Assembly: GCA_001938485.1 (NCBI GenBank)
Contig: MQRK01238124.1
Coordinates: 5,376-69,375 of the forward strand
Length of the DNA stretch: 64,000 nucleotides
Direction: 5' to 3'
From: Girardia tigrina
Taxonomy: Eukaryota
Below the pieces are notes generated by a model. That model had not been told where the DNA came from. It ran no database searches and saw nothing but the letters and a program-made list of their open reading frames with translations. Both the position numbers and the translations under genes were made by a program. How positions within the stretch are numbered: position 1 is the first letter of the stretch; each line of letters starts with the position of its first letter. Below, in pieces: positions 4,439 to 57,699 of the stretch.

Positions 4439-5470
4439 TGTGAAGGACGGGCTCATTTTATAAATTTTTGAATAATTAATTTTTGTAAATAATCTCTATT
4501 AAATAATAATAATTTAAATATTGCTAATATTTTTGTATTTCTAAAATAAGACTAATNNNNNNNNNNNNNNNNNNNNNNNNNNNNNTTCTGAAATAAAATA
4601 ATATTCTGTATTTCAAATTTGAAAATTGTATTTCTAAAATAAAAATAATATTTTGTATTTTAAAATTTCGTAATTGTGATTCTAAAATAGAATAATATTT
4701 TGTATTTCAAATTTAAAAATTATATTTCTAAAAAATAAGATTAATATTTTGTATTTTAAATTTGAGAATTGTAATTCTGAAATAAAATAATATTTTGTAT
4801 TTTAAAATTTCGGAATTGTAATTCTGAAATAAAATAATATTTTGTATTTTAAAATTTCTTAATTGTAATTCTAAAATAAAATAATATTTTGTATTTCAAA
4901 TTTGAAAATTGTATTTCTAAAAATAAGAATAATATTTTGTAATTTAAAATTTCAGAATTGTAATTCTGAAATAGAATAATATTTTGTGTTTTAAAATTTA
5001 GAATTGTAATTCTAAAATAAAATGATATTTTGTATTTTAAATTTGAGAATTGTAATTCTGAAATAAAATAATATTTTGTGTTTTAAAATTCAGAATTGTA
5101 ATTCTAAAATAAAATGATATTTTGTATTTTAAATTTCAGAATTGTAATTCTGAAATAGAATAATATTTTTTATTTCAAATTCAAAAATTGTATTTCTAAA
5201 ATAAGAATAAGATTTTGTATTTTAATTTTGAGAATTGTAATTCTAAAATAAAAAAATAATAGTTATAAATAATAAAAATAATAATTTCTAAAATTTCATT
5301 TTAATAAATGGCTTATCATTATTTATAAATCCATATTTTTATGTATAAGAAATCTGGTCAGAAAAAAAGAAAACGAAAGTTCCTCAAGAAAAATTGTTTA
5401 AATAATTGTTGTTTGTGTTATTAATAAATTTTTGGTGTTATGAATTCTAATATTGATCAAGAACCCAACA
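4439..5470 (+). mobile_element. Solo LTR-like insertion (TG...CA) containing a minisatellite
   Basis: TGTGAAGG...CCCAACA with 5-bp TSD ATTTA; lies between RT and RNase H of the host Gypsy. Confidence 0.75.
4520..5255. repeat. AT-rich minisatellite, ~46-47 bp unit, ~15 copies
   Basis: Unit like AATTGTAATTCTGAAATAAAATAATATTTTGTATTTTAAAATTTCAG; period 47 measured at 4771/4818/4865. Confidence 0.95.
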
Positions 5471-8353: not shown

Positions 8354-9589
8354 AAATAACAATAACAAATTACCATTTATAAACTGAAAAATGTTCATGT
8401 AATAATCGTATAATAAACTTGATTAAAATTGATTATCAGATCAAAAGATTTTATCAATGTTACTTACAGAAGCCGCTCTCAGTAAATAATAAAGTATGAA
8501 TGTAACTTTAACTAGCAAATCAAAAAATTAATTTTTTTTCATCTACTCTACTATACCAACAAAGTTTGAATAAAGAAAATAATTTAAAGAACACAATTAA
8601 AAATTAAAAAATTAATATAAACTACTTATAATTTATAAGTAAGTCTTTTTCAATTAATATTGTTCAGGAACTCTGATGGGACCGTTTTTTCCCAATTCTG
8701 AGACCTTAAAAAGTTTTTTCACGTTATTATTTATTGTCATCGAGAATGAGTAAGTGTGCAAAGTTTGAAAAAAAATGATTAAATAAAAATCCTTCAAAAA
8801 TAGGTTTTGTTTGAGGAATTTTTAAATGCAAAAATATTTTAAATTAAAAGTAAAAAGGAACTCGAAAATTAAAAAGAGAAAATCCAGGCTTTTGGTTTTC
8901 TAACGAAGCAAACTTGTATGAACTGGTCTTCCTCGTTGGTTTGTCTTGGGTTGCTAAGTTCAACCTGACCCTTAGACCTTTCAAACCCCATGGATTTGCG
9001 TCTAGGGTCGTGAGACCTTCCCAAACAACTCGGGATTTATGTCTCTGACAACCACATTTAGAACCGTTCCTGTAGGTGAACCTTTGTGGAATATCGTATA
9101 AAGGTGTTGGAAGTCGAAGGACGATTTTGCTCGCACATGAGGTTTATCCGATGCGGCTTAGGGATCCTGGGCTCAATGGACTCTCTAGTCCGAGCTTGAC
9201 GCTTTGTATAAAACTCATGGCCTTGCCATTTTGTTCCCCCTTCTGAAAAATGGAAAAATTGACCGTTCAAAAATCAAATTGAATTTTGATTTTCCATATT
9301 AAAAATCCAAAATTGATGAACATTTATTTTTATTACACAATTGCATAATGCGCGTCTAAATCTGATTGCGTCTGATACGCGTCTAAATTGATTGATTTAA
9401 ACAATCTCTGTAGTTTTTATAAAATCAGGATCCTTTGTTATAATTTGATATTGTTATAAATAATTATATGTATTTTAATTTATAATTCTATAGTTATTAA
9501 TTATTCTTACTCTTTATGTGAACAGAACTCTACTTGGACAACAGAATTTTTTAATCTTTTGTATTAGGCAAAATTACTATTACATTTTT

Positions 9590-9970
9590 TAATAAATGTA
9601 TTATGTTATTAGTAACTATTTAAATCTTTTTTAGAAGGGAAAATTTTATACCAAAAATTTTAAATACTCCATTTTGCAATTAAATAGTTACTAATAACAT
9701 AAGAAATTTATTATAAAGCATGGAAGAAAAAAAAACCAAAAAATTTCTATTTAATACAGTTTAAACATTTGTGGATAATCGTAAAACGTGTTTTGCAAAA
9801 AAAAATTTCGATTTACTAGTTTGATCAAATTTTCACATTATCATTTATTGTCGTCGAGAATGAGTAAGTGTGCAAAGTTTGAAGAAAATCGATTGAGTAA
9901 AAAGCCTTCAAAAATAGGTTTCTAAATTGCATGGATACACATATTAAAAGCAAGCTAATATAAAGAATGG
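9590..9970 (+). repeat. Dispersed repeat (non-autonomous TE); further copies at ~8715-8810 (+) and ~50560-50825 (-)
   Basis: Shared GAGAATGAGTAAGTGTGCAAAGTTTG...CTTCAAAAATAGGTT block. Confidence 0.75.
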
Positions 9971-11157: not shown

Positions 11158-11763
11158 TTGATCATGGACAAAACGTGTTGAGCCTACCAAAACGATCCCA
11201 AAAGCAGAAATTCACCAACAGAAGGTTATGCTTTCCGTCTGGTGAGATTTTAAAGGAATTGTGTTTTTTGAACTCCTTCCGAGGAATGAAACCATCAATT
11301 CAGACAGATATTGTGGTCAGTTGGAGAAATTGGCTCATTCAATTCAACAGGAACGTACTGAATTGGCAAACCGAAAAGGAGTTGTAATTCAGTATAACGC
11401 AAGACCGCATACAAATTTGACCACTCGCCAGAAACTCTTATCACTGGGTTGGGATGTTTTGCCACACCCACCGTATTCTCCAGACTTTTTCCCATCGTAT
11501 TTTTACTTATTTAGATCACTGCAGAATTCCTTAAACAGAAAAACATTCCCCAGTGATGATGACATCAAATCGTTCCTAGACGGCTTTTTTGCTGACAAAG
11601 GCAAAGGTTTTTATGAATCAGAAATAATGAAGCTACCGGAAAGGTAGAAGAAAGTGATTGAAAATAATGGACAGTATATCGTGTAAAAATATTTGTGTAT
11701 CCATGTCATTTTTTGATAATAAATATTTTAGTAAAAAACGCAATGACCTTTTGGCCTACCCAA
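11158..11763 (+). mobile_element. Mariner 3' half with right TIR (same family as 36795-38018)
   Basis: YNARPH, HPPYSPDF, TIR ...GCAATGACCTTTTGGCCTACCCAA-TA. Confidence 0.92.
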
Positions 11764-12899
11764 TATTTTTGTGTGACTTACTGAATTTCTCAGATTCGAT
11801 AGTTTTGGTTACTAATTTTTGCTCATGCGTGGTACTATGTAAACTCATTTAGCCATTAGAATGTCATGTGACGTACGTATACGGGCCATAAGGCGTAAGC
11901 AAAGAGAAATAGCTATTCATGCACCTTATGATGTACGTTATAGTGACAAAAAGTTTCAATTAAACAGTTTGAGGTTAAGTTTATTTTTCCCATTTCGAGT
12001 TAAACCTTTGTGTCAAATTACATGCGGTACATGGAATTACATGACAACAAAAAAATCCTATATGAAATGGATTATATTATAAAAGAACTTTTATGAAAGT
12101 AAGCGTTATAGACATGTTCCCTCTTCATAAAAAGTGTTTTATCTTAGAAAAGATTTTAAAATTTCATTAGTGTTTTCGGTTCTCATTACCCTGCGACATT
12201 GGCATAATGCAAACAAATTTTTGGCTGAAGTTGTTTAAGTGTTTTATAATATTTTCCAACCTATTCCAATCTAATGTTAATGCCATAACTTAAAAAAGAA
12301 GTATCATTTTGGGAGTGTCTTTATTCTAAAAAACTTTCCTATTTTATTCGTAGTACCACTGTAGGCGGCTTTCCAATAATTGTAGGATTTCAAAGGATAA
12401 CAATATCAAGTAATTATATTTGAATTCCACCCATTATTTTCCATCAAAATGTGATGTAGGATCATGAAAGATATGTTGGGACATAATTTGAAACATAGGA
12501 ATACCTATATAAGTTATTTTTGTATTACGTTTGATCCATTGTGTAACCTTTCAATATTGTACTTGTGTCATTCCAATGCAAATTATCTAATCAGAAAACT
12601 TCATACGACTTTCTTTCGTAAAATCATTTAATATATGAATTAAGAATTGACGTTATTCATAATTTTCTGAACAGAATTTCATTACATTTGTTAATTATTC
12701 CATGGAAATCTCTAAATAAATCAAAAAAAGATACGCCTTACCGGAATAACTGTTACTATATAAACTTAGAATTGATGCTAAAATGAATTTGTCATGAGGA
12801 AAATCAATGCTTAAAAAATAATATAAAAAAACGTTCTGTCCAATTTTAATACTATTTATTTAACCAATAGAGAAAATATGTAAATTGAGAAATATAAAC

Positions 12900-17223: not shown

Positions 17224-19273
17224 CTATTATAAATATAACATTACAGATGATTATTAAAACAATATACAGTAAAAAAACATAAAGAACTTTATAAATAAGC
17301 TTTAATGGATTTGACTTCCAATCTTCAACATTTTCGAAGAATGTTTGAAACTGATAGACATATTTTGTTTTGGACGCTGTTTTCTTATCATTATGTTATT
17401 ATTATTAAGTCTTTCTATTAAGTCTTATTATTAAGTCTTACTCCATAATGAGGCGGAGTTCCATCATTTCGCCTTAAGCATTCTTGCTCTTTCTAACTAA
17501 TGATCAAAATTGACTTAAAAGTTTGTGAACATAATTGGCTCCTACAACTGTACTATCACAGCGCTATGGTCTAAAGATTTATTCAGACAACCTTTCCTAC
17601 AGTAACGAATAATTTACTTTTTTAATCATTTTTTTTAAGTTTTCAGATTTACATTCTCTTGTACCGATCTATTAATATGTGTAATAACCTCTCAATTTCG
17701 TTGTTAACAGTTGATTTTATTTATTTTTTGTGTGACCTTTTTCCTTTTATGTGTGTATACGTGAGTTGTACATACTCTGCAAACATGTGATGTGTAATTT
17801 ATTTAAATTTTATTTTTTGTTCATATTTTTATTTTTATTATTTTATTTCCAATTCTGGTGGAAGAAGCAGAAGAAAAGATAAAGAAGAAGGTCGAGAAAG
17901 AAAGAAATTATTAAAATTATTATTGCATGATTTCAATTTGAATTTTCAAATACAAATTGAAATCAATACAGCAATAATAATTTTAATCACAATGACGACA
18001 AAAATATTAACTGATCATTTCTCAGTTTTGGCTGATTATTAAATGGTGTGACGTCTCAGCTTTGATTTTGTATCAATTATCAACTCCTTACGTAACGTTT
18101 GAACAGACTTTTAATTAATCACTGAAATATTTAATCTGTATTGGCTGTTTCAGTTCAAATCTATCGAGAAATTAATTATTTGACAAATCATCGAGATTTT
18201 AGTATCCGTCTGTATATACATGTACGATTTCGTGAGTATCTGTTGGTGCAATTAAACCGTTAAGAGTTGAATTCAAAATTTTATTTTTTTGTTTATTTGT
18301 TGATTTATTTTTTTTTAAATTTACTCTAAACAGGTTCGTCAAACAAAACTTAGTTTGACTAACCTGGTTAGTCTCATCTTGTATTATAATAAAAAAAAGT
18401 AAGAGATTCACTCCTCTGAAGATACGTTATTCGAATTAGTTATTTATTTTTTACAATATGTATTAACTGTATTATGATAAATTTTTGTAAATTATTTTGT
18501 ACGCGATCAGAGAGTGTTTGAGTAATTTTCTTTGTGTATACTCGAAATAAAGTTTGTTAAAATTTTGTGTTTGACTTGGAAAGTGAAATTGTAAGGCTGA
18601 TTAAAGTAAAAACATCAATTTGCGAAGAAATCGAGATCGATATTGAACTAAATGATTAGATGGAGAAAGAATATACTCCACCTCAAGTGCAGCGACAGAG
18701 TAGTATCGGTAGATAACAGATACTACTAAGAACACCAATATGGGTTTTCACACATTTATTTTTATCGCAGTTTGAATTTTCTTTTGAACAATTCTCAGTC
18801 AGGCTTTCATAATTTGACACCTAGCTAAATTGATAATTTTAACAAGCAATTATTCAAACAATTTTTTTTGAAATTATTTTCAGATTTTATTTTCAAAATT
18901 CTACTTTTATAATTTGATTAATAACTTTATCTAAAAATTAATCTAATTTGCAAATGATTTTTTTAATCAAAAATATTTATTTAATAAATTTAAAATTATT
19001 TACTTTATCCAAAAATTTTTAATATTCATATTTTAACAGTTTTTACATATCTTATGTTCTAATTTAAAATGCAGATTATGCTCGAATGTTTGCATGCTAT
19101 ATGATGATTTAAGTATGTTGAGTTTAGAATGGTGATTCTCCCACCCAGATGGAAATTGGTATTTTTTTATAGGATTCTTCAAAACGTATGTAAATATAAA
19201 CTTACTAATAAAGTAATTTTATTTTTTTTCGAAATTCAAAACCCAATTTTATTAACTTTTTATGTGAGTTATA

Positions 19274-20609
19274 TGTTACATGTTAAATTTATTTCTTAAA
19301 TGAAATATTTAACATGCAAAAATATAGATAATTATTTGTTTAAATAATATCTATTTTCAAAGTATTGTTAGTGAAAAATAAATTTTATAGATTTGTGATT
19401 CGTTGTTACAAGCTATCCGGGCAATGATAAGCGATTTAAAAATTATACTCGATCATTTGGAGAAATTTAATGGAAACGGCAGTTTTGAAATTTGGAAGAA
19501 AAAGTTCAAGATGATTATGAAAATCCAGGGGATTTTGGATCCGGCCCCATATCTTCCATTTTTGTTGACTGATGTTCCTTTAAATATATACATGGAATTG
19601 GATGAAAAGAAACAGAGCAACTGTGATGAAGTACTGCAAATCTTGGACAATTCATTCGGATTAACCAGACGATCTGCGTACAGCCAACTGATTAATTTGA
19701 AATATTACGAAGGACAAGACTTGCAGCGGATGTCACAAAATTTGATCAACAAAAATTCTTAAGTATCATTGATTGTGGACCCTCTCGATTTGCAATATGG
19801 AAACTAATCAAAGCTGAGGATGACAAGTCGATTGTTACAGAGTTTTCAAATTTGTTCTGCGAGCGTGGATCTCCAAAGGAGTTGATTATTGACAATTATA
19901 CGACATTTCATTCAACCGAATTCAGCAAGTTGATGGAAAAGTGGAATGTACATGTCCTATACCGCGCTATTAATCGACCAAATTGCATCGAAATAATAGA
20001 GAGAAATCATAAGACAATCAAGAGAATTGCGTCTCGATCGAATATCAGTATCATGGAAGCATTATGGTGGTATAACAATACACCATCCGACGGAAAGAAT
20101 ACACCTCGTTCAGTACTNNNNNNNNNNNNNNNNNNNNNNNNNNNNNNNNNNNNNNNNNNNNNNNNNNNNNNNNNNNNNNNNNNNNNNNNNNNNNNNNNNN
20201 NNNNNNNNNNNNNNNNNNNNNNNNNNNNNNNNNNNNNNNNNNNNNNNNNNNNNNNNNNNNNNNNNNNNNNNNNNNNNNNNNNNNNNNNNNNNNNNNNNNN
20301 NNNNNNNNNNNNNNNNNNNNNNNNNNNNNNNNNNNNNNNNNNNNNNNNNNNNNNNNNNNNNNNNNNNNNNNNNNNNNNNNNNNNNNNNNNNNNNNNNNNN
20401 NNNNNNNNNNNNNNNNNNNNNNNNNNNNNNNNNNNNNNNNNNNNNNNNNNNNNNNNNNNNNNNNNNNNNNNNNNNNNNNNNNNNNNNNNATTTCTTAAAT
20501 GAAATATTTAACATGAAAAAATATAGATAATTATTTGTTTAAATAATATCTATTTTCAAAGTATTGTTAGTGAAAAATAAATTTTATAGATTTGTGATTC
20601 GTTGTTACG
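19274..20609 (+). mobile_element. Internally deleted short-LTR retrotransposon (gag N-terminus joined to integrase core)
   Basis: 137-bp 5' LTR 19274-19410, repeated at 20490-20609; gag ATG 19424; integrase LAADVT..DCGPSRF..DNY..ERNHKTIKR from ~19717. Confidence 0.9.
19411..19422 (+). promoter_or_regulatory. Non-canonical primer-binding site complementary to tRNA-Lys(UUU) nt 1-12
   Basis: AGCTATCCGGGC immediately after the LTR terminal CA; reverse complement GCCCGGATAGCT. Confidence 0.7.
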
Positions 20610-21248
20610 AATTATGTGAGTTATATTATCTTTATTAAAAAAACTAAATAAAAAAATTAGTTTTAGTAAAGTAATAACAAACGAGATAATTAGAAAATCA
20701 TTTTAAGAAATATAAATCAATTTTAATAAACAAAAAATATATTTTATTTATTATTTGTAATAAATATTTTGTTATTATTAATGTGATAAATCAAAGGAAC
20801 ATTGACAGACATTCATTATTTAGACAAACCAACCAAATGTTGTTCAATTTAAAATTTAAAATGACAGGTCTTCCAAAAATCGATAGTCTGAGAAGCAAAA
20901 GAATGTATGGATCAATGGGATCACAGAATCGATAACGTCTCGGGAAAATATTTAAATCATACCAGTTAAATATACAAACACATTTAATGTCTCAAAATAA
21001 TAAAATAATTAAATAAAACATAATTTTTCATAGGATTTTTTTCGATATTTTCATCATCATCTGAAACTCAGAAATATATAATTTTATAAAATAATGTTAA
21101 ACTAAAGGTAAATTTATATTTGATTATTTTGTGACTGTAACTATATGTTTCTTAATCAGAAACGATCATATGTTTTCATGAAAATAATTATAAATAATAT
21201 TAAATGATTATTCTCATGACTTAATTATATTATTCATTTTAAACATAC

Positions 21249-21664: not shown

Positions 21665-22120
21665 TATGAGGGGTTAGTTTAAATTTAAGTTTCGCAAAAA
21701 TAGTTTATTATTTTTTTTAATTTGAAAATTTAAAAGAAATAAATTAAAAAATTAAAATGTAGAGTAAAAATATGATAAACAAAATACTTATTTAAAATAT
21801 ACTTACAGTAATAACAATTGATGTATTTTAATAAAAGTTATGAAATAAGTTTAAATAAATTTTAAAATAAATTGATATTTTATTGATATTTTAAGAAACA
21901 TTTTTTTTAATAAAATGGTTTATTGTAAATTTAAATTAATTAGTTTTTTTATGATAAAGTTTCGTAAAAAATGTAAAATTATTTTAAGGTATAAATTACG
22001 CAAATTTTGAAAATTTAATCGAAAAAATTTAATGGTGAAATTTTGGGTGAAATAATTTAATTAATAAGAAATTTGTTTAAATGTGTGAATTGTTGATATT
22101 AATAAATTCTGTGGCATAAA
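21665..22120 (+). repeat. Dispersed ~450-bp repeat (possible LTR); second copy ~43949-44410
   Basis: Colinear similarity from ATGAG.GGTTAGTTTAAA to AATAAATT.TGTGG. Confidence 0.8.
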
Positions 22121-23285: not shown

Positions 23286-23694
23286 CTTTCAATACACAAA
23301 CTGTTTTCGATTTATCTGAGAGGAAACTTTGAACTTTAGATGTGACAGAGACTACTTTATAGAACAATAAGTAGTAAGTTTCTATTTTCCTCAATCGTGT
23401 TTTACCAATCTTTTGTTTAATATCTTATATTATCCAGCTCATAGTAAACAGAACCATCTAATGTTATACACTTCTACAATATCATTTCTGCTGGGTTAAA
23501 TCCAATGGTAATTCTAGATAATTACATCATGCTATATAAAAATTCAATATTCCTTTCGACTAACCTTATCTACACACTACGCTCTATCATTATATGCAAA
23601 AATTAGCATTTGCGTACCCTGTGAGACACTTTGTATTTGTATATGTGTACTATGTCTTTAAATATTAAGTAATAGAAATTAATATTGATTTTTA

Positions 23695-25519
23695 TAGGGT
23701 TTCCAGAACTTATGTCAACTATTCGCAAGCATTAGTCAACTGTTTTAGATCTTTAGTCAACTGGTAAAATTGATTATTTATTCGAATTTTTAGCATTTAT
23801 ATTTTAGATATATCCATATAAATCAATTAAAGAAAAATATTTCAATTCGTACATGTCTTCCACCAAGCTGAATGGAAATTACTGTTCTAAAAATACATGA
23901 AGATTAATTTCGGTTGAAATAAAAGAAATACTCATTCTGCAGGTCTTGGAAGGAATCAGCATAATTAACCTATTTCTTTGGTCTTCCAGTATCAGTTGTT
24001 AGCAAGAGAGTTAAAAAAAGGAGTTCAACAGGAGATTTTTAAATCAAAGAGGTGGTGATTTCAGGTCAAAATTTTGCAATTCACATGAGCAGAAAATTTG
24101 TGAATGGGTTTATACGGATTCTCTTTTAACATTAAATGCACTAAAAGATAAAGTTTTCAGTGAATTATGGATGGATACAAGGGTCATTACCATGGGTATA
24201 TATATTATAGTGTATATCTTATTTCAAAACACATATCTTATAAAAGTACAGGTATGAGCAGTGCTCGAAGTGGGAAAAAATAAATGCCGGTATGTGGAAA
24301 CCGGCCATACAGTGATTTTGTTCCTCCGCTGCTCAATGCCAACACCCTGACATCAACTCCCACGCCCCCTCTGCTTACATTATGCTGTGCTTGTGTGTGC
24401 GTTTGTTTGTGTGAGGCATCATATACAGCAGTTGAGGTGAGACGGAAGCGTAGCCATATAATTCATTCCTTAATAAATGCTTTCCAATTTTTAAGCCTTA
24501 GGAAAAACAAGTACCGGCATGAGCCGGTATTCCCCTTAAAAATCATACTGCCTTAAAATCAAATAAGTGCCGGTATGTCATACCGCCTCGAAAACAAGTG
24601 GCGGTATGGCATCCCGGCTCACTACGAGCCCTGGGTATGAGTAATGTTTTGAATTGTTTTTTGTTTTATATTTTGCATGTTGTATGTTTATACAGATTGT
24701 GTCTCTATAGCCCAGATGACTGATTGGTGTTTTCTGTGATTCTTACTAATTTAAAAAAATTAATTTAATTTATAAGTAAAAAGATTTTAAATATTTTTCA
24801 AATATAATATTTAAATTTTTTATTTTCAGAAGGCTATTTTATTTAATATTTTCTATTATCCAGCTCATAGTAAACAGAACCATCTAATGTTATACGCTTC
24901 CCCAATATCATGTTATTTAAAATTTTAATATATTAATTTAATTGGTACTTTTTTGAAAATGTTTAGATTTAATTTTAACCAATTAAAATCTAGATAATTA
25001 ATTAATATTAATAAATAATTTTTATTTATTTTAAAAATTAGAATGAAACTCAGCAATATATTAATCAAGAAATATATCGAATAACGAAAGTGGGTTGAAT
25101 AATTATTGTAATGACAATTCTGCATGTGATATTAATAAATTTTCAAAAAATCCTATTGCCATTGTTAATAACAGGTTTTATTCATAAGCATTAGGTTGAC
25201 CAAATTATATTATCTGTATAACTTAATGAACAATTATAAATTTAATAAAATAAGTTAATATATAAAATTAGATCTCGAAAAAAACGATACTCAATAAAAG
25301 TTGACTAATAAAATTTAAAAAATATTTTTATTGCATTTAAACTAGATAGAAAGATCTGTAAGAATTTTGATTTTTCTGTTGAATTTAATTTTTAATTTAA
25401 AACATTTTAAATTTTCTGATTTTTTGTGCTATTTTATACATCAATTTTAAATATAACATTTGTTATATTTACTGTTGACTAATGATTGAAAACAGTTGGC
25501 TCAAGTCCAGGGAAAACTA
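23695..25519 (+). mobile_element. Decayed Tc1/IS630-like element
   Basis: Imperfect TIRs TAGGGTTTCCAGAACTTATGTCAACT / AGTTGGCTCAAGTCCAGGGAAAACTA; HTH remnant RGGDFRSK..ICEWV..D.LLTL..LK.KV at ~24050-24190. Confidence 0.5.
24259..24633. mobile_element. hAT-type MITE
   Basis: TIR CAGTGCTCGAAGTG/CACTACGAGCCCTG, 8-bp TSD GGTATGAG, subterminal (G)CCGGTATG repeats. Confidence 0.92.
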
Positions 25520-25700: not shown

Positions 25701-25935
25701 ACTAATTTTTTAAAAAGAAATAGGCTTATATACTGCCAGTAATGATTATGTAATCAATACGTCATCAATAAATCATTTAAAAACTCTCAATAAAGTTGTT
25801 GAGAGTGCATTTAGAACGTTAATTTTAGGATCCAAAGATCTAATATATAACACTTCACATGTCACTCACACTCAATAATTCTTAAATTGAGTGCACAGAA
25901 TTTTAAAGTTATGGGTATTTATGTTTCCTATACCC
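25661..25935 (-). mobile_element. Penelope-like element 3' end
   Basis: NFKILC...CEVLYIRSLDPKINV (GIY-YIG C-terminus) followed by a hammerhead motif; homologous to 31612-31880. Confidence 0.85.
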
Positions 25936-31652: not shown

Positions 31653-32225
31653 CATGAAAAAATGAATTTTAAATCTGCTTATATAGGCAAGCAGTGATTA
31701 TATCATCAATGGATTATTGTGTCATCTAAACACGCTCAATAGGGTTTTCGAGAGACCCGTTTGCACATTAATCTTAGGATTTAAAGATCTGATATAAAGT
31801 GCTTCACAGGCCACCCTCTTCCAATAGTTTTTAAAATGAGAACACAGAATTTTAAAATCATTTATGTTTATGTTTTCATTCGACTTACAACCCTTTCTGT
31901 GTTCTGCAATATTACTCCCACCTACATTCCGACCATGTTCTTGGATTCTCCTACAGAGATGACGGGACGTCTCTCCAATGTATGAGGCATTACACCATTA
32001 CATGTAAATTTATATACGAGATCCGAACATAATCCAAATGGGATTTGAGATTTATTACAAAACACATTTTGGATTTTATATGTTTGTGATATTATTTTTA
32101 AATTAAAGGCATTATTAACGCATTTTAAAATTGAACGTTTAAATTGACCAAATCCCTCTGAATATGGAATGCTTAAAACGTATTTTAAAGTTGTTGAGTC
32201 TTCTTTATCATTTATAATCGGTTTT
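31612..32225 (-). mobile_element. Penelope-like element GIY-YIG endonuclease and 3' end
   Basis: VYKFTC..SYIGETSRHL.RRIQEH..IAEH..FKIL..CEALYI..LNPKINVQ. Confidence 0.92.
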
Positions 32226-36794: not shown

Positions 36795-38018
36795 TTGGAT
36801 TGGCCAAAACGTCATTGCGTTTTTGAGTACGTCCTAATAAAAAGCTTGAAAATATAAAACGATGTGATAAAATTTAAATTCAATTATATATTCGGAAACC
36901 TTAATTTTCAGACTATGTTTATACAAAATATTAATTGATTTTGTTTTAATTTATTACTTTACCGTCAATTCGAAATGGAAAATCGAAATGTGCATATTCG
37001 TCATGTTTTGTTGCATTATTTTCGCAAAGGTTAAACCGCTGTGCAAGCTCATAAGAAGATATGCTTTGTATATGGTAGTGACTTCGACAGTGTCAATATT
37101 GGTTTTCTAAATTTCGTTCTGAAAAATTTCATCTGAAAGATGCACCACGCTCCGGTCGACCAGTTGAAGTTGATGGCGACAAAATAACAGCACTGATCAN
37201 NNNNNNNNNNNNNNNNNNNNNNNNNNNNNNNNNNNNNNNNNNNNNNNNNNNNNNNNNNNNNNNNNNNNNNNNNNNNNNNNNNNNNNNNNNNNNNNNNNNN
37301 NNNNNNNNNNNNNNNNNATTTGGTGAAACGTATAGACATTTGCGATTCCCTTTTGAAGCGAGAACAAAGTGATCCATTTTTGAAGCGCTTGATTACGGGT
37401 GACGAAAAATAGATTGTTTACAACAATGTGGAACGCGACGATCATGGTCAAAACGTGGTGAGCCTGCCAAAACGATCCCAAAAGCAGAAATTCACCAAAA
37501 GAAGGTTATGCTTTCCGTCTGATGGGATTTTAAGGGAATTGTGTGTTTTGAACTCCTTCCGAGGAATAAAACCATCAATTCAGACAGATATTGTGGTCAG
37601 CTGGAGAAATTGGCTCATTCAATTCAACAGGAACGTCCTGAATTGGCAAATCGAAAAGGAGTTGTAATTCATCATGATAACGGAAGACCGCATACAAGTT
37701 TGACCACTCGCCAGAAACTCTTATCACTGGGTTGGGAGGTTTGGCCGCACCCATCGGATTTTCACTTATTTACATCACTACAGAATTCCTTAAACAGAAA
37801 ACCATTCGCCAGTGGTGATGAAATCGTTCCTAGGCGGCTTTTTTTGCAGACAAAGGCAAAGGTTTTTATGAATCAGGAATAATGAAGCTACCGAAAAGGT
37901 GGAAGAAAGTGATTGAAAATAATGGACAGTATATCGTGTAAAAATATTTGTGCATCCATGTTATTTTTTGATAATAAATATTTTAGTAAAAAATGCAATG
38001 AATTTTTGGACAACCCAA
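36795..38018 (+). mobile_element. Full-length but inactivated mariner
   Basis: Both TIRs with TA TSD; MEN..HIRHV, ITGDEK*, HHDNGRPH; frameshifts; internal N gap. Confidence 0.95.
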
Positions 38019-38020
38019 TA

Positions 38021-39940: not shown

Positions 39941-40003
39941 AAGCTTAAATTTTAAATAATTTTTAAAAAGTAAAAGAAAAAACCCTAATTTTCTAATTAT
40001 ATA

Positions 40004-41905
40004 TGTTGTGACGATCAATGAAGAAAAAGAATAATAACTCTAAAAATCTTTTGTTATTTGAAAATCACCCACAAATGGATTTCAGATTTAGAACAGTAAA
40101 ACAACTGTTATTTTTAATAATAAATGCGGATAAATATTCGTCAATTGCCCGCACAGAGAATATAACTCCCGCCGAGACATGAATTCCGATAAATCTTTAA
40201 TTCTGATTTGGTTTGCTCGTTTCCAGGTGATCTCCCCCTCAAAATATTTTACTTCTAAACCAAGAACCCTCACACTGTTGTTATAGTTTACTCTCTCTGG
40301 TGGTTTACATTCTAGTCCAAATTTACCAAACATCTGTCGCACGTCTTCTGCTTTAACTTTAGGTTCATCCACGAAAATGTCATCAATATACAAACCCGTG
40401 GTGGCATTAATATTCTGATCTGATGACAAAACCTTTCTCACGAGTTCTGCCAAAAGCCGAATCCCATACGAGTTAGAGCAAGCTTTTTACCGTTAATGAT
40501 GCATAACTGGAAGCGCCACAAAGCTGGATCAACACAAATTTGCATATATGCTTTTGAAAAATCCATTATTGCGAATTCGTTACTTTTTCTCCTCTACTCG
40601 CGTAATTTTCACGGGCATACATCAAAGATCTGCTGTAAATGTCAATGTATTTGTTTACTTCTCTGAAATCAAAAATTGGTCTGATTTTTTCTTTGTTCAC
40701 CTGAACGATACCGTAAATAGGAATTGCTCCCACTGATTTACCCATCTGCCTCTCATTGTACTCGAACAAATAACCCCGTTTCACCCACTCTTCCAAAATA
40801 TCCATTGTTAGTCTATCTTTTGATTTTGAATCTTTCAATCGCATCTGTCTGTTCGATAAATATTCCGGTGCGTTGGACTTCCAATCTCAGTAGACTGCCC
40901 ACTCTCTGTCGAACTGGATCCTGAAGTTATGTTTTTCGATAACCACCTCCTCGAAACCCGCTTTTGCTGAATTATAACTCGTGCTGACACTGCAGAAATT
41001 TGATAATTCTGAATTAACTCCAAACTTTACGTACCTGTTACGAAGCACGATTCTCCTCAACTTCTCAATTGCTTCCATTCCCAACAACAAATCCAAACTC
41101 TCTAGCAATTCATTCATAACTATACAATCCAATCTTAACTCTTTTTAATCACAGATCATATCGATAATACAGGACCCCACCGAAATTTCTGTTCCATTGG
41201 CCAACATGAACTTGTCATCGCCCCATCTTATAGTAGATTCTTCCACTTTGCTCCTCCTGACGACCGATCGGGAGCAGCCAGTGTCCACCAGAGCCTGATC
41301 CATTTTCCCTTAACCATGCACTGAACCAATGGAAGTGCCTTTACTTCTGTCGAGAAGCCTCTGGCACTGACGACTTCTCGCTGGTGTTTTTTGCCCAACA
41401 GTTTCTGGCGATATGACCATTTTTATTGCATCTAAAACAAGTAATATCATTATTTCGAACTATAGGACTTTTACTGCGGTCGGTAACCCCGCTAAAAACG
41501 CCGCAATTTCTAAATTTTCAACCTTTCATCTAATAGATGAAATACTTTCGAAGGACTTCTCTGCTGTTCGTCTGAAAGCTTCATTAATATACTCAGGGCC
41601 GACCCACTTTAAACGAACGGAAATAGCACTGAAACGTCCTTCATTTGTTGCATCGAAGTCATCACTGTGAATTGTTTCTTCCATATTTCCCACGAATTGT
41701 CTCCGTTGAATTTATCGATACATTCGAGAATCAACTTGATGCTTGCCATTGCCAAGATAGCTTGTTGGGACGATTAATGAAGAAAAAGAATAATAACTCT
41801 AAAAATCTTTTATTATTTGAAAATCACTCACAAATGGATTTCAGATTTAGAACAGTAAAACAACTGTTACTTTTAATAATTAATAAATACGCTATACATA
41901 TTACA
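40004..41905 (-). mobile_element. Internally deleted short-LTR retrotransposon (gag-PR-RT)
   Basis: 143-bp 5' LTR 41763-41905, partial 3' LTR 40004-~40125, TSD ATATA; gag MASIKLILECIDKFNG; ALVDTGCSRS; IRPIFDFREVN; YIDD. Confidence 0.93.
41751..41762 (-). promoter_or_regulatory. Non-canonical primer-binding site complementary to a tRNA 5' end
   Basis: AGCTATCTTGGC right after the LTR CA; complement GCCAAGATAGCT has the tRNA nt 1-12 pattern N7-TAGCT. Confidence 0.65.
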
Positions 41906-42479
41906 ATATAAAAATACTGTAGAGAATATTTATTTTGTTTCTCAATTTTTTTTATTAGTTATGGCTTCCGCATTTAGCAATATTGGTGTTCGTAATTGTA
42001 GGGAACCCTAGATATAATGATTTACAAGTAATTCTCTTCTAACAATTAATAAAGCTAGTAAAAATAATTTGGAAATCATTTCTGTTTATCCAAATCTAGA
42101 AATAATAATATACTATATCTGCTTCAGTTGTAAATTTAACACATTGTTGATTGCCAATTTTACGCTGAGACTTTTATATAACCGGCTTTTATTTCGTAAT
42201 TCAATATGGAAGTGAAACAATATAAATAACCTTCAATAATCTTTTTTATAATAAAAGGGACACGTTTAAATACTATGAACAAAGCTTTTGCAGTATTCTT
42301 TGTTTACCTGGGTTTCATAAATTGAAATAGCTAATGCGAGTACAAACATGAGTTAACTTGTGATTGGTCAACAATGTTTAATTGTGAAAATCATGTAAAA
42401 TAAATAAGACAAATGAATTTTAGATCATACTATTATTTTGTTATTTTATTGTATCTTTTTATTTATAATAAAATTTTAC

Positions 42480-45400
42480 TTTCTAAAATAGATTCACCAA
42501 ATAAAATAAATGGTCCTCCTTCTAGATTAAGACCATCGGTACTTATTTCTACAGAAACTTTTCCTTGAAGAATTAGAATCGCTTTAGTCATAAATTTTCC
42601 TTTCTCAATTATTTTGTTGAGTTTAACGTTTTCTAGTCTAAAGAATATTGATAGAAGTCATAAATTATAGTTAACATTACTTATAGATGTAGTTGGAAAC
42701 AATTTTCGATTTCAGTAAACTGGTTAAGACAGATTCCGTTACGTATGTTTCACTAAATGATGAAATACCTATGGAAAAGTAAATCATCTTATTAATTCAA
42801 TTTAAATATTTAATTATTCTATCAAAGAAGAACTTACCCAAACGTTTCCAAAACTTAATACAATAAAGACAAAACAAAAAAAGAAAAATAGGGTATTATG
42901 AGAATTGATGGTTCAAATATTTCTATGGTAATATTTAAAAATACTTAAAAATAAATATAAAATTTTCTTATTTAAAACTATTAGACTATTCGCCAGACTC
43001 AGCAATATATTGCTCTAATACAGGAAGTAAATCTTCTTCATCAAAATTTTCGGAATCTGTATCTCAGAATCCCTTCCTTTATGATCTTTATTTGTTTGAC
43101 TAACACTTTTATAACTATAAGCGTCACAATCTTAAAGTCATTTTATTTGGTGTATAATATAATGTATTATTTTTTTACTTTTTTCTTTTAATTTTATTAT
43201 ATTATTTTTAACATTTTCATGCCGATGCAATGTCGAGAAATTCCTGCGAAATGTGTGTACAATGTCAGACGATGCACGAAGAAGCTAAGAAAGGAAAATT
43301 AAAACAAGAATATTAGCCCTTGACGATGAATCACAAGATATCAGATGGCAAAAAGATAATGATGAGATAAACCAAATTAGAGAAGATCTTAGAACTGGGA
43401 AAACAAAGAAATTGATACTGAAAGATAATATCGTGACGACAATGGATAACAAATACTGGAGTTAGATGGTAGAACTTTGATAAGGAATGTAGAATGGCTA
43501 AAGCCATTTAAATCGAGGGTGATGTGAAGAATATTTTTGAATGGTGCTTATTGTATGTTGTTTGGTATGTTGTTTTAGGATCATGTTTCTCCCACCCAAA
43601 TGGAAGATTGATATTTTAAATATTTTAAAACGTCGGGTTATTTAATAAATTATTAAATTTTAAACAACCAATTTTAAAGTAAATTAATATTTCATAAATA
43701 ATATTTTAACAATAATTTTCTTAAAATAAATAAAATTTATTTTAATTTAAAGTATAAATTATTTTGTAAAAATTAAATTGTAATTTAAATTTGTTCGAAT
43801 AATAAGACGTTAAAGAATATTATTAAAAATATTATCAATCAAGAACGATATCGAGTTACGCAAGTTTTACGGAGAATTGTTCTAGTAACAATTCAAATTG
43901 TGATGCAAATAAATGTATGAAAATTCAATTAATGTTCCTAATAGTTACTATGAGTGGTTAGTTTAAATTTTACATTTCGCCAAAATAGTTTATTATTTTT
44001 TTAATTTGAAAATTAAAAAATGTAAATTAAAAAAAAAATAAAATGTAAAGTCAAATATAATAAAAATTAAATACTTATTTAAAATATGCTTGCAATCATA
44101 AAAATTGATAAATTTTAATAAAAGTTATGAAATAAGTTTAAATAAATTTTAAAATAGATAATTAACGGATTAATATTTTAATAAATAATTTTTTAATAAA
44201 AGGCTTACTATAGTAAATTTAAATAAATTAGTTTTTATGATAAAGTTTTTTAAAAATGTAAAAATTATTTTAAAGTTTAAAATTTAGCAAATTTTCAAAA
44301 TTTAATCGAAAAAATTTAATAGATTAATTTTGGGCGAAATAATTGAAATAACAAGAAATTTGTTTAAATATGTGAATTGTTGATGTTAATAAATTTTGTG
44401 GTGTTAAATTATGATTTCGGAATTTGATAATAATGAAAGTTGCATTTGTTATTGTTACAATTTTACAAGTCGTTGGGTGCTTTTGTCGGGGTGCTATTAT
44501 TTATAATAAAAGCCCAAGTCACTCACTGCCTGCCTCACTGCCTCACTAACGCTGTAAGGTAAATTTTTGAAATGATTTTATAATCAATAAAGAAATGATT
44601 GTATATTAATAAATAAATATTAGAATGAATGCGATTTTTGTAACCGTAATTTCTTAAATATCATTTTGTCTCGAGATATGATTTTCAAATTTGCATTAAA
44701 CAGAAATAAAAACTTTTTCTATACGATTTTTTATACTCGAAACACTGAAATTTTCAATAAAAATGCTTTCAGAAAAAAGTCGCGTGATCTAATAACATTG
44801 AACCCCCGGTAAGAGAGGGCCGCGAAGCGGGCCGAGCGCGCTAGTTATTTATACTATCATAATATTTTTTTAAATCACAAATAATATAAGATTTACAAAT
44901 TTTTGTTTTATAAAAATTCAAAACGTCCTTTAATATTTGGGATTTAAACAATATATTAATAGTAGAAATAATTATACTTTCTGTTAAGAATTTAAACAAA
45001 AATTTCAAAAAGTCGGCTCTTTTGTCATGTGATGATTTTGTCGGGGCGATTTTATCAGTGGGCGCTTTTGTCGGTTCACCGTTTCGATGATGTATCGTGA
45101 CGAAAATCGAGATTCACAAACACAACATAGCCGTCTAATCGAAAATTTCAAATAATAATTGCATTATTTTGACATAGAAGAATGATTAAAGCAAATTGCA
45201 TGTGATTACAGTGGTAAATCGAGCAATTAGTGACAAGATTTTTAAATTCTTGTATGGAAGATCGACTGAGCTAGATGGTTTTGAAAACCCCACAGACCAG
45301 GAACACTCCACGAATGTGGCAGAGTTGCTGTGACACAACTGCAACAACCATGTTATTATAAATTGATATAAAATGTCTATAAACCGTTAAACAAAAGAAA

Positions 45401-48400
45401 TTAACAGTTTTCATGTAGCAAAGGTAAGTAAAGATGTTTCACCTTAAATGAATAGGCAGAGGAACGTGTTTTATGTTACGAAATTTCAAAATATATTTCT
45501 AACTTTTACTCATATATTCCAGAGTTGCTCTGTATAAATAAGGTGATAGATTTTGGCTCGTGGAGCCCGATCCAAAATTACCAATGTTGTTGCTCCTCCA
45601 GTCTTTCTTTCTTTCTCGCAGTGTATTGTTGTCTATTTTAAATTACCTTAAATTCATTAATAAAATATTGTTTAAATTTTACAAAAAATATCAGTTTCAT
45701 CAACTATTTCGTCTTGAATAATTTCTTCAATGACATCCTCTAAAGTAATTAAACCGATCATTTGTCGATAGGGATCGCCGTCTTCTGTTGTTATTACAGT
45801 TTCTATAAAAGCTATATGAGCTTTTCCTGAAAAGTTACATGAAATAAAGTAATATAAACTTAATTATATATTAAAACAAAATGTATTATAAGCCTCATCC
45901 GTCTGGACGGATGACTGAGTATCGTGGAGACTACAATACCAGTATTGCAGTGCAGGGTAGTTATTCATAGACTCTGTATAGGGTAGAAACAATAAATAAA
46001 CAATAGAGCTTACTGACTTTCTAGCACGACTTTAGATGCAAGAATGCGAGCTTTCAGTGCACGTACACACTTCGATTTCCCAGTCAGAAAGGAACAGTCA
46101 TGATATTTCATACAGTGATTCTGTTGAGCTTTGGCTATGTAAACACATTTCGTTCAATAAGTAAAAGGACATCTAAATATACCCAGATCATTTGTATTAC
46201 CACAAAATGTATTAATCTTTTAACAACCGGTCTCGAATATAATTCTGACACAGATCAATTCTACTCTTACACCCTTCATAATCTCTCAAACATTAGATAT
46301 ACGAGTATGATTCCTTCTAATAAATATGTATAGATTGCTAATCAGAAAAAATGTAATTCAAAAATTAGCCTCCGTATTTGTTCTTTTGTTTCTTTCAAAA
46401 GAAATATGAGAATATCACTGTGAATAAATTGTCCCTATCTTAATACTTTTTCATTATAGTGAAAATTATATGGTGAAAGCTGTTTCAGGAAAATGCAATC
46501 TTAATATTAAAAATATCAATGTTCCCATTTTTCTAAGGCAAAGGTTGAGTTATCTTCACTTGTTGAAAAAGATATTCCTTCTTCATGTAGGGTATATTGA
46601 CATCAACGATTTAAGAATATATCTCCTCGTCAATATCTATTAATTTATCGATAGATGTTAAAAATCTTTTTTTTATCTAGTAAATGATTATGCAACCACT
46701 TTAGGGGCAGCTTCTTCCTCTTTTGGTATTATGTGTCTCCCCGACGAGAAAGTCAATAAAATCGGTGAGCGGATCAAACATGACAAGATAAAACAGAACA
46801 ATGACACAACAGAACATTTATTTATTTGTTCTTTATCTACTACACATATTAAGATTTATTAATTGATGTGAAAGAAACAAAGCTTCGACAAAGTCAATCT
46901 AAATCTTTTATCTATTTTTATTATATTTTTTTTGCCATACTTTCTTCCACTTTTGATTATCGAATGGAGCTGAAATTTCGCAATCTTATTAATTTCCGAT
47001 TACATTTTATATTTATGTAAGTTGTAACGAAAGTCAAAAACAATTTTTTTCCTAATGTCAGTAAAGTGCTTAAGATTAAAATAGTTTAAATGATTTGAAT
47101 GGCGGTTAAAATATTTGGTGCTGAAAAGTAAGTAATGCATGAATTGAAAGCAAGAAATGAAAATGTAACAGTCAACCTTTATGTACATAATGTTGTAAGG
47201 GTAGTGTTGATTACTCGACTCGGTAAGTTGAAGAAAGACATGTTGGAGGCTTGTGAACGTCTCACCTTGAATGACTGCATACAACCATTTGGGTCGTTCT
47301 TTATAGAGGCGGCAACTGTCTCTGTCGATATCTGTCCTAATCGTTGGATTGATTTTTTTAGAAATATGTTTTGGTCACGTTGATATTCATTAAATTGGAT
47401 TAAACATGTGAAAATTTGATGTCGATTTCTGCGGGACAAATTAATTAAATTAGTGAGCACCAAAGTTTACATAATTGAAAATGTTGGATCTTTAATGTAC
47501 TGTTTACGAACAGATATTTGATTCATTAATATGACCAACACCCCCCCTTTATATACTTCTGTTTTGTTTTTATTAATATTTTATATATCTTCAAATTCAT
47601 GAATTTAATGGTTAAATCAATTGTCAGTTCTCTTCCTGATGGAATTTTTTTATTATTTTGATGACTTTTTCACATTTTAATATTATAAAGTTCTTTGGTG
47701 AATAAAGATTTTCTATTTCCTATCCAACATTACAGAATTTACAATTAACGACATCAAAATACAAAAAGCTCCACCTTGTTTGAATTCGTTTAGTATTTCT
47801 GGTAATTTTACATCGTCGGGTACAATGAGAATTGGGTGATTGTAAAATTTACAGATGGTGGACACAGGTGTATTATCTTGGGGGTCTATAAATAGTAAAT
47901 CTTTTATATTTAAAAGACCCTTAATATTATTTTTGTCTGTCTCGTAAATTGGTATTCTTGTAAATCCATTACATACAATTTCCTTCATTAAGTTATAATC
48001 TAACACGGCATTATTACTGATCATATATGCATGACTGATGGGGGTCATTACGTCTACTACCGTTTTATCTGTTAAGGTTAACGCACTCGATATTATTTCC
48101 ATCTCGTCTTTCTGGACCATACCAAACTTTTCCTAAAATAATGTCAAAATAATAACCATGTATAAATTATATTATTATTGATAATATTGTTTACATAATA
48201 TTAATATAATGAAAATTGAAATATATGTATATATATATATACATATATACAGGGAACCTCTAATAGACGGATACATTCGGGATGTCTATTAATGTCCAGT
48301 TTATAAAGGTGGCCGGATTTCTGAATTTCATGCCTACTTTTCAAAACATTGTATGTACATATTTTATAAAATATAAAAGTGCTCTATAATATAGAGTGAG

Positions 48401-57144: not shown

Positions 57145-57699
57145 AAAAAAAATAATTCGATAAAAATTGATTATATCTATATGCAAATATATACACACCT
57201 GTTTAAATTATACAGTGCTTTTCATTTAACAACAGCAGAATACGAAATTCTAACCTTAATAAAATGGATTGAATTTAATTATCCAAGTAAATAATAGTTG
57301 AAGGTCTTTTAACAATTGCATTTATAGTGTCATTCCCGATGATTTAGAGAATAGTCTCATTAATTAAAAGAATGTATATTAATTGAATCCACCTCACAAA
57401 AGTATAGCTAATCACAGATAGGAATAATCAAAATAATTTCATTTAATAAAAGAATGTCCAATGATTAAAAGAATTTTATATAGAAGCATATATACTGCAT
57501 GAAGAAATAACTTTACACACTAACAAATTAACGAATCATGTAGAACTTCGTGTTGAAATGTTTAAAAGCAATTTCATTTAATAAAAGAATAATTAAGATT
57601 AATTAATTAAAAAAATAATGAGTTATACACAAAATTTCTCCGATATCTCCAGTGCAGATGAAAATGTAGCACCAAATATTGAAGAAAGGTAAGGGTCTA

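What the first reader, a model, noticed from the sequence alone, without database searches (positions are those of the whole stretch)
19400..19426. LTR retrotransposon whose primer-binding site matches the 5' END of a tRNA
Seen: the 137-bp LTR ends ...TGTTACA and is followed with no spacer by AGCTATCCGGGC-A-ATG(gag). There is no TGG, and no complement of this 12-mer in the LTR. Established: canonical PBSs pair with the tRNA 3' CCA end, Drosophila copia uses a cleaved 5' tRNA-iMet half, and Tf1 self-primes with an 11-nt RNA cut by its own RNase H. The 12-mer is the exact reverse complement of GCCCGGATAGCT, nt 1-12 of conserved metazoan tRNA-Lys(UUU), and the match stops exactly at tRNA position 1. 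Inference: minus-strand synthesis is primed by a 10-12-nt 5' tRNA fragment cut in the D-stem, possibly by the element's RNase H (a trans version of Tf1 priming). I do not know whether this has been described.
Basis: partly seen in the sequence, partly recalled or inferred. Interest (0 to 1): 0.9.

Follow-up and report, generated by a model that had tools for sequence, protein, structure and literature searches.

The report
Retroelement primer site matching tRNA 5' end
Two decayed copies of a small, widespread animal LTR retroelement carry, right after the left repeat, a 12-base site that pairs with the first 12 bases of a tRNA rather than its tail, which implies an apparently undescribed way of starting reverse transcription.

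Summary
A 137-bp LTR ends at 19410. AGCTATCCGGGC (19411-19422) follows with no spacer, then A, then the gag ATG. This copy is a dead remnant: a gag front part, an integrase piece, an N gap and a 3' LTR.

A second, diverged copy lies on the minus strand (40004-41905). It has AGCTATCTTGGC at the same place.

In relatives from metagenomes and from Trichuris, a barnacle and a cephalopod, 65 of 69 loci carry AGCTA plus 7 bases just upstream of gag, in 56 distinct contexts. In 48 of those 56 it follows an LTR ending in ACA. Conservation starts at the LTR end and stops after base 12.

Three of the discrete 12-mer classes are exact reverse complements of nt 1-12 of tRNAs printed in papers: Lys(UUU), Lys(CUU) and Phe(GAA). 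Elements with 21% gag identity share a class, and elements with 73% identity differ. No complement lies in the LTRs, so self-priming is excluded. In six elements the ATG follows the 12-mer directly, so no other primer site fits.

Best reading: minus-strand synthesis starts from tRNA nt 1-12, cut in the D stem. What makes the cut, and which host tRNA is used, are untested. I found no prior description in the open-access library.

The parts
19274..19410 (+). Element 1, 5' LTR (137 bp; starts TGTTAC, ends TGTTACA)
   Evidence: Repeat pair 19291-19416 / 20490-20615. The start is inferred from the TG end and from homology with the LTR of L001, which follows a polypurine tract.
19411..19422 (+). Element 1, putative primer-binding site AGCTATCCGGGC, complementary to tRNA nt 1-12
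   Evidence: tRNA sequences are printed in PMC8715211 and PMC4688932. The same site occurs in relatives.
19424..19762 (+). Element 1, gag remnant (front part only; broken gene)
   Evidence: Matches positions 1-101 of a 244-position gag profile in one piece and then ends. Closest relative is P0001 at 68% identity.
19765..20117 (+). Element 1, integrase core remnant; runs into the N gap
   Evidence: Pfam rve. Covers pol profile positions 672-800 of 932. Protease, RT and RNase H are absent.
20118..20489 (.). N gap inside element 1 (left as it is)
20490..20609 (+). Element 1, visible part of the 3' LTR (ends TGTTACG)
   Evidence: 97% identical to the 5' LTR.
41763..41905 (-). Element 2, 5' LTR (143 bp; starts TGTAAT, ends CCAACA)
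   Evidence: A 5-bp target duplication TATAT lies at 41906-41910 and 39999-40003.
41751..41762 (-). Element 2, putative primer-binding site AGCTATCTTGGC, followed by A and the ATG
   Evidence: It has the same position and frame of conservation as in element 1.
41359..41749 (-). Element 2, gag remnant (broken gene)
   Evidence: The gag profile is matched in 2 pieces, with at least 1 frame change and 1 internal stop. About half of the profile positions are missing.
40127..41330 (-). Element 2, pol remnant (protease and RT only; broken gene)
   Evidence: Pol profile positions 11-400 of 932 are matched in 3 pieces, with at least 2 frame changes and 6 internal stops. RNase H and integrase are deleted.
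40004..40125 (-). Element 2, 3' LTR (its first bases are lost with the pol deletion)
   Evidence: 95% identical to the 5' LTR.

Best explanation
The 12 bases after the 5' LTR are the element's primer-binding site. In the genomic RNA they pair with nt 1-12 of a host tRNA: the 5' strand of the acceptor stem, U8, A9 and the first three bases of the D stem. The candidate tRNAs are of the Lys or Phe type. The tRNA must be cut after nt 12. That cut leaves a 12-nt RNA whose 3' OH sits opposite the first base after the LTR, and reverse transcriptase extends it into U5.

Later, plus-strand strong-stop synthesis copies the primer to its physical 5' end, which is tRNA nt 1. This explains why the site is exactly 12 nt long. 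It also explains why the site is reset to the tRNA's sequence in every cycle.

Shown: the position, the sharp bounds, the conservation, the discrete classes equal to real tRNA 5' ends, the absence of a self-primer, and the lack of room for another site.

Inferred: that priming happens this way. Also inferred is my preferred agent of the cut, the element's own RNase H acting on the annealed RNA-RNA duplex at its end, as in Tf1. That last step I rate at about 0.35 on its own.
For: Four independent LTR pairs show that identity ends just before the 12-mer: el1, el2, Trichuris suis L014 and barnacle L015. The cephalopod locus L096 shows the same.

Of 69 loci with a gag N-terminal hit, 65 have AGCTA plus 7 bases within 160 nt upstream of gag. 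About 17% would be expected by chance.

Across 57 distinct contexts, the top-base share is 0.93-0.98 at LTR positions -3 to -1. It is 0.93-0.98 at sites +6 and +10 to +12. It falls to 0.58 at +13 and to 0.72 at -4.

Counts of distinct contexts by class, written in tRNA sense: GCCGAAATAGCT 15, GCCGCGATAGCT 11, GCCTAGATAGCT 11, GCCGTGATAGCT 6, GCCCGGATAGCT 4, and singles.

Exact matches to printed tRNA 5' ends:
- Lys-UUU, human and zebrafish.
- Phe-GAA, human and Drosophila.
- Lys-CUU, human.

The same class occurs at 21% gag-domain identity, and different classes occur at 73%.

The ATG follows the 12-mer with offset 0 in L009, L024, L034, L069, L083 and L085.

There is no LTR complement of the 12-mer.

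The predicted 12-bp duplexes have energies of -18.7 to -23.5 kcal/mol.

Relatives have identical LTRs, 5-bp target duplications and polypurine tracts, so the lineage is or recently was active with this site.
Against: No host tRNA gene could be examined. ARAGORN found none in the window or in 478 kb of fetched loci, and Rfam found none in the window.

The classes GCG, TAG, GTG, TCG and el2's AAG match no tRNA printed in the searched papers.

No nuclease is known to cut tRNA after nt 12, and there is no expression or cDNA data.

The anchoring on AGCTA fixes columns +1 to +5 of the conservation table by construction.

The literature check covers only the held open-access library, and one candidate paper could not be opened.
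Confidence: 0.75

Rival explanations
1. The primer and site are as above, but the 12-nt primer is made by a host nuclease before annealing (a short 5' tRNA fragment), not by the element's RNase H.
For: 5' tRNA fragments of Lys and other tRNAs are abundant natural small RNAs (papers found). From established knowledge, not tested here, the copia primer is a host-cut 5' tRNA fragment.
Against: The fragments printed in the papers found are 19 nt or longer, not 12. A cut placed exactly at the end of the duplex is what Tf1's RNase H does on an RNA-RNA duplex (references listed).
Confidence: 0.3
2. The 12-mer is a conserved cis signal with another role, such as packaging, translation start context, or a target or decoy for tRNA fragments. 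Priming then happens elsewhere or by another RNA.
For: There is no direct evidence of priming. The site lies 0-31 nt from the gag ATG, so a role in translation cannot be excluded from position alone.
Against: It abuts the LTR end, as primer sites do. Its bounds coincide with tRNA nt 1 and nt 12. Its variants reproduce the differences between real tRNAs. In six elements no other non-coding base lies between the LTR and gag.
Confidence: 0.1
3. Tf1-type self-priming: the first bases of the element's own transcript fold back onto the site.
For: The site length (12 against 11 nt) and its position resemble Tf1.
Against: No complement lies in the LTR of el1. Across 53 elements the best upstream match averages 7.4 of 12, against 7.5 for shuffled controls. 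The one 11-of-12 case lies in a TATA-like stretch about 330 nt upstream.
Confidence: 0.03
4. Canonical priming by a tRNA 3' end at a cryptic site further downstream.
For: None found.
Against: No TGG follows the LTR. Gag coding starts 0-31 nt after the 12-mer. Conservation is at background level from +13 on.
Confidence: 0.02

Closest known systems
Tf1/Tj1/sushi-group self-primed LTR retrotransposons
   Same: A short primer site of 11 against 12 nt directly after the LTR, with no TGG. The primer must be released by a cut at the end of an RNA-RNA duplex. In Tf1 that cut is made by its RNase H.
   Different: There the primer is the first 11 nt of the element's own transcript. Here no complement exists in the LTR, and the site equals host tRNA 5' ends, so the partner acts in trans.
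Half-tRNA priming in copia, Ty5 and other hemiviruses (established knowledge; not retrieved here)
   Same: The primer is a 5' piece of a tRNA that has to be cut out of the mature molecule.
   Different: Those sites pair with an internal stretch (the anticodon-stem region) of initiator tRNA-Met, and the primer is about half a tRNA. Here the site pairs with nt 1-12 of Lys- or Phe-type tRNAs, and the primer would be 12 nt.
Canonical tRNA 3'-end priming (retroviruses, Ty3, most Ty3/gypsy and BEL/Pao elements)
   Same: A host tRNA is the partner. The site abuts U5, and it is regenerated from the primer.
   Different: The opposite end of the tRNA is used. There is no TGG, and the site is 12 nt, bounded by the tRNA's 5' end rather than by a modified base. 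Standard pipelines search tRNA 3' ends only (for example the method quoted).
Retrovirus-like LTR lineages (Odin, lokiretroviruses, Troyka/Kuafuorterviruses)
   Same: Pol order is protease-RT-RNase H-integrase. The pol profile hits retroviral integrase (MMTV) and HIV and foamy-virus RT better than Ty3 in the PDB sequence search.
   Different: Troyka/Kuafu have CG..CG ends, 3-bp duplications and xADD in RT. Here the ends are TG..CA, the duplications are 5 bp, and RT has YIDD. Odin is reported only from sea anemones and has a dual RNase H. No phylogeny was made here, so placement is open.

Membership tests
LTR retrotransposon (general) | [quoted passage not shown] | tested here: met
   The window copies have LTR pairs, and el2 has a 5-bp duplication. 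Full relatives are 4.6-4.7 kb with 5-bp duplications and a polypurine tract. All 29 pol proteins show RVT_1, DUF7047, RVT_3/RNase_H and rve. Gag has Retrotrans_gag and a CCHC knuckle.
Canonical tRNA 3'-end primed elements | Site starting with TGG, complementary to the 3' CCA end of a tRNA | tested here: not met
   The site starts with AGCTA in 65 of 69 loci. No TGG is present.
Tf1/sushi self-primed elements | The first bases of the transcript, within the LTR, are complementary to the site | tested here: not met
   no enrichment over shuffled controls.
Tf1/sushi self-primed elements | The primer is released by the element's RNase H cutting an RNA-RNA duplex | not testable with these tools
   An RNase H domain is present. 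Its activity on a tRNA-site duplex is unknown.
Half-tRNA primed elements (copia type) | The site is complementary to the anticodon-stem region of initiator tRNA-Met | tested here: not met
   The site complements nt 1-12 of Lys or Phe tRNAs.
Troyka / Kuafuorterviruses | CG..CG termini, 3-bp duplications, and xADD in RT | tested here: not met
   Here the ends are TG..CA, the duplications are 5 bp and RT has YIDD, against the descriptions.
BEL/Pao | Pfam Peptidase_A17, DUF1758/DUF1759 and DUF5641 (as I recall the family's usual Pfam set) | tested here: not met
   None of these is among the Pfam hits of 29 pol proteins or of gag.
Ty3/gypsy (Metaviridae) | RT clusters with Ty3/gypsy; RT_RNaseH-type RNase H | tested here: inconclusive
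   The gag and protease domains are gypsy-like, but there is no RT_RNaseH hit. The RNase H matches RVT_3/RNase_H. PDB sequence hits favour retroviral RT. No tree was made.
tRNA-Lys(UUU) as the partner of the window's element 1 | The host tRNA-Lys(UUU) begins with the complement of 19411-19422 | not testable with these tools
   True for human and zebrafish. The host is unidentified and no host tRNA was available.

The most novel reading that the evidence does not exclude
A metazoan-wide, so far unnamed retrovirus-like LTR lineage (about 4-4.7 kb, with pol carrying DUF7047) primes reverse transcription with the 5'-terminal 12 nt of host tRNA-Lys or tRNA-Phe. Its own RNase H cuts that piece out in trans. 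This would be a mechanistic bridge between tRNA priming and Tf1-type self-priming.
Probability: 0.3. Interest if true: 0.9.

Novelty: new variant of a known kind. Interest (0 to 1): 0.8.

Why it matters
Textbook accounts give three ways to start minus-strand synthesis in LTR elements: a tRNA 3' end, an internal tRNA stretch (half-tRNA), and self-priming. A site that pairs with the extreme 5' end of a tRNA would be a fourth, and it is used by a whole lineage found in nematodes, crustaceans, cephalopods and many metagenomes.

The finding makes concrete, checkable predictions, namely a 12-nt primer and a cut inside the D stem.

It also gives 5' tRNA fragments a possible role in retroelement replication or control.

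Finally, it explains why such elements look as if they lack a primer site to annotation tools, which search tRNA 3' ends only.

Tried and rejected
- **tRNA genes.** I searched the window (ARAGORN, Rfam) and all fetched loci and found none, so the host-tRNA test could not be done.
- **Viral contig scan.** A scan with the pol alignment found no relatives.
- **Host identification.** A flavin-reductase-like ORF gave a best hit at 73% identity without organism or name, and the best organism-named hit was a nemertean at 48%. The host remains unknown.
- **Variant 12-mers in papers.** The AAG, GCG, TAG, TCG and GTG classes gave only chance hits.
- **Site sequences in papers.** A search for the site sequences themselves returned only tRNA probes and primers, and no retroelement paper.
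- **Sample accessions.** None is mentioned in the papers.
- **Named lineages.** Odin, Troyka and Kuafu were read and do not fit.
- **Petrolisthes locus L097.** It has pol but no gag or LTR, so it was not usable.
- **Not attempted.** Structure prediction of pol and an RT tree were not attempted.

Full report
**Observation.**
The window has 30% G+C and six N runs. At 19274-19410 lies a 137-bp AT-rich repeat that ends TGTTACA. Its copy at 20490-20609 is 97% identical, and identity stops at 19410/20609. AGCTATCCGGGC (19411-19422) follows directly, then one A, then an ATG that opens a 112-codon frame. The junction 19-mer is unique in the window. The complement of the 12-mer occurs nowhere in the LTR, even with 2 mismatches.

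The left end of the LTR cannot be read from the 3' copy, because that part lies in the N gap 20118-20489, which I left as it is. The start at 19274 rests on the TG end and on homology with a relative whose LTR begins right after its polypurine tract.

**What the copy is.**
Element 1 is a remnant:
- Gag matches only positions 1-101 of a 244-position profile and then ends.
- The next readable piece is part of the integrase core (pol profile positions 672-800 of 932).
- Protease, RT and RNase H are absent.
- The rest is the N gap and the 3' LTR.

In counts, element 1 has one large internal deletion, a premature end of gag, and no frame change or internal stop inside the two retained pieces.

**A second copy.**
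One search also hit GCCAAGATAGCT at 41751-41762, next to another LTR pair. On the minus strand this is element 2. It has a 143-bp 5' LTR (41905-41763) ending CCAACA, then AGCTATCTTGGC, A and ATG. It is flanked by a 5-bp duplication TATAT.

Its genes are broken as follows:
- Gag is in 2 matched pieces, with at least 1 frame change and 1 stop, and about half of the profile is missing.
- Pol (protease and RT only) is in 3 pieces, with at least 2 frame changes and 6 stops.
- RNase H, integrase and the start of the 3' LTR are deleted.

The two elements' LTRs do not align with each other, but both LTRs end in ACA. Downstream, the 12-mer (10 of 12 bases), the A and the ATG are shared.

**Relatives.**
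A search of 1.8 billion representatives with the gag remnant gave 67 relatives, mostly 200-300 aa. Their contigs show the same anatomy:
- A 68%-identical relative sits on 3808-bp, circularly permuted contigs (L001-L004).
- A 43% relative (L009) and a 34% relative (L010) were also recovered.
- All of these carry the identical 12-mer after an LTR ending in ACA.

Pol has protease, RVT_1, DUF7047, an RVT_3/RNase_H-type RNase H, an H2C2 finger and rve in all 29 proteins tested. Gag has Retrotrans_gag and a CCHC knuckle. A pol search found 230 proteins with E-values up to 1e-10, most on contigs of 3.5-4.7 kb. Named hosts are Trichuris suis and T. muris, Amphibalanus amphitrite, Petrolisthes manimaculis and Argonauta hians.

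Complete copies were read in three named hosts:
- T. suis: 4700 bp, 330-bp LTRs differing only at a few sites near their 3' ends, duplication CAGAA.
- The barnacle: 4610 bp, identical 398-bp LTRs, duplication GTATT.
- Both have a polypurine tract and TG..CA ends.
- The Argonauta copy has identical LTRs and duplication TCAGT.

**Catalogue of the site.**
I located gag with a profile, each frame translated on its own with X at stops, and read the bases upstream.

- Of 69 loci with a gag N-terminal hit, 65 have AGCTA plus 7 bases within 160 nt. About 17% would be expected by chance.
- There are 56 distinct contexts, and 48 are preceded by ACA.
- In tRNA sense the classes are GCCGAAATAGCT (15 contexts), GCCGCGATAGCT (11), GCCTAGATAGCT (11), GCCGTGATAGCT (6) and GCCCGGATAGCT (4). 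There are also singles, including GCCTCGATAGCT (T. suis) and GCCCGGCTAGCT.
- With the two window copies added (57 contexts), the share of the commonest base is 0.93-0.98 at LTR positions -3 to -1 and at site positions +6 and +10 to +12.
- The share is 0.47-0.70 at +7 to +9, then drops to 0.58 at +13 and to 0.72 at -4.
- Columns +1 to +5 are fixed by the way I anchored the search.
- The ATG follows with offset 0 in six elements. There, the 12-mer is the only base stretch between the LTR and gag.

**Link to tRNAs.**
All tRNA sequences used here come from papers:
- Human tRNA-Lys3(UUU) begins with the complement of element 1's site, and its nt 13 is C.
- A human 'Lys19' 5' fragment and a zebrafish Lys(TTT) probe agree with this.
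- The commonest class, also found in the barnacle and the cephalopod, equals the start of tRNA-Phe(GAA). This is shown by a human primer and a Drosophila 5' probe.
- The class of L054 equals the start of human tRNA-Lys(CUU).
- E. coli tRNA-Phe shares element 1's 12-mer, so the 12-mer alone does not name the tRNA.
- The remaining classes differ only at tRNA positions 4-7, the middle of the acceptor stem. They keep G1, C2, C3 and U8 to U12. No printed tRNA matched them.

**The classes are not simply inherited with the element.**
Pairs with the same 12-mer go down to 21% gag-domain identity. Pairs with 68-73% identity carry different classes (Phe-type against GCG) in different samples. This fits a site that is rewritten from the host's tRNA. 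It does not prove it.

**Self-priming and other sites.**
Across 53 elements, the best match of the site's complement in up to 450 nt upstream averages 7.4 of 12, against 7.5 for shuffled 12-mers. The single 11-of-12 case lies in a TATA-like stretch about 330 nt upstream. No TGG site exists, and conservation after +12 is at background level.

**Mechanism.**
I take the 12-mer to be the primer-binding site. It would pair with tRNA nt 1-12, with predicted duplex energies of -18.7 to -23.5 kcal/mol. Because nt 13 (C) faces the LTR's last A, the duplex ends at nt 12, inside the D stem. A 3' OH must be made there.

Copying the primer to its 5' end during plus-strand strong-stop synthesis would set the other bound at nt 1. 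This is the standard replication scheme applied to a 12-nt primer; it is inference. Who cuts is open. Tf1's RNase H cuts at the end of an 11-bp RNA-RNA duplex (references), which makes the element's own RNase H the economical candidate. A host-made fragment is the alternative.

**Comparison and novelty.**
The element works like Tf1 in primer length and in needing a cut. It works like copia-type elements in using a 5' tRNA piece. It works like all tRNA-primed elements in using a host tRNA. It fails the defining feature of each (see the membership rows).

The lineage itself fits neither Troyka/Kuafu nor BEL/Pao. Its relation to Ty3/gypsy, Odin and retroviruses is open; the PDB sequence hits favour retroviral integrase and RT.

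Searches of the held library for the site sequences, and for 'complementary to the 5' with primer-site terms, found no description. One hit could not be opened. Older and subscription literature is not covered.

- Several times in my reasoning I recalled tRNA sequences from memory.
I should have avoided that.
- I built search profiles (HMMs) of gag and pol in /scratch for locating genes. For broken genes only counts and outer bounds were printed.
- No contig looked human.

Noticed in passing
window 19260-19273 and 20612-20625: Element 1 lacks the family's 5-bp target duplication. Instead, the 14 nt before its 5' LTR recur 2 nt after its 3' LTR, which ends ..ACG rather than ..ACA. Aberrant insertion, later rearrangement or an assembly effect were not distinguished. 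An earlier count gave the second copy one base off.
   Followed up: partly
L001-L004 (ENA assemblies ERZ2227286, ERZ2271649, ERZ2272740, ERZ2272456): The closest relative appears as 3808-bp contigs at about 20x coverage that are circular permutations of one another. This could be collapse of the two LTRs in assembly, or circular DNA forms.
   Followed up: no
window 11160-11765 and 37440-38020: Two copies of a mariner-type transposase remnant (Pfam Transposase_1) lie 26.3 kb apart with 89-95% identity. Both lie next to N runs.
   Followed up: partly
window 47716-48120 and 56215-57198 (-): Exons of a CNNM-type metal transporter gene (CNNM and CBS domains). A pogo-like transposase remnant (CENP-B_N, DDE_1) at 49320-50148 (-) lies between them.
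   Followed up: partly
window 62841-63299 (+): An NADPH-dependent FMN reductase-like ORF. The best hit is 73% identical and carries no organism or name, and the best organism-named hit is a nemertean (Lineus longissimus) at 48%. The window's host stays unidentified.
   Followed up: partly
window 4586-5258: An AT-rich tandem array of a 46-nt unit, about 14 copies, with a higher-order period of 189 nt, just after an N run.
   Followed up: no
window 21766-22114 vs 44053-44401; 25773-25926 vs 31722-31875; 23411-23485 vs 24837-24911; 8716-8807 vs 9830-9921: Further dispersed repeats at 74-92% identity, of unknown nature.
   Followed up: no
L014 13495-13575 and 13604-13684: Behind the 3' LTR of the Trichuris suis element, the last about 80 nt of the LTR plus flank occur twice in tandem.
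   Followed up: no
L096 4624-4975: The Argonauta hians element's LTR ends ..TCAAG, not ..ACA. The Phe-type 12-mer still follows directly, and the 5-bp duplication TCAGT is intact.
   Followed up: partly
L097: The Petrolisthes manimaculis pol gene (928 aa, intact frame) has no gag and no LTR within 6 kb on either side. It may be a truncated or captured copy.
   Followed up: no
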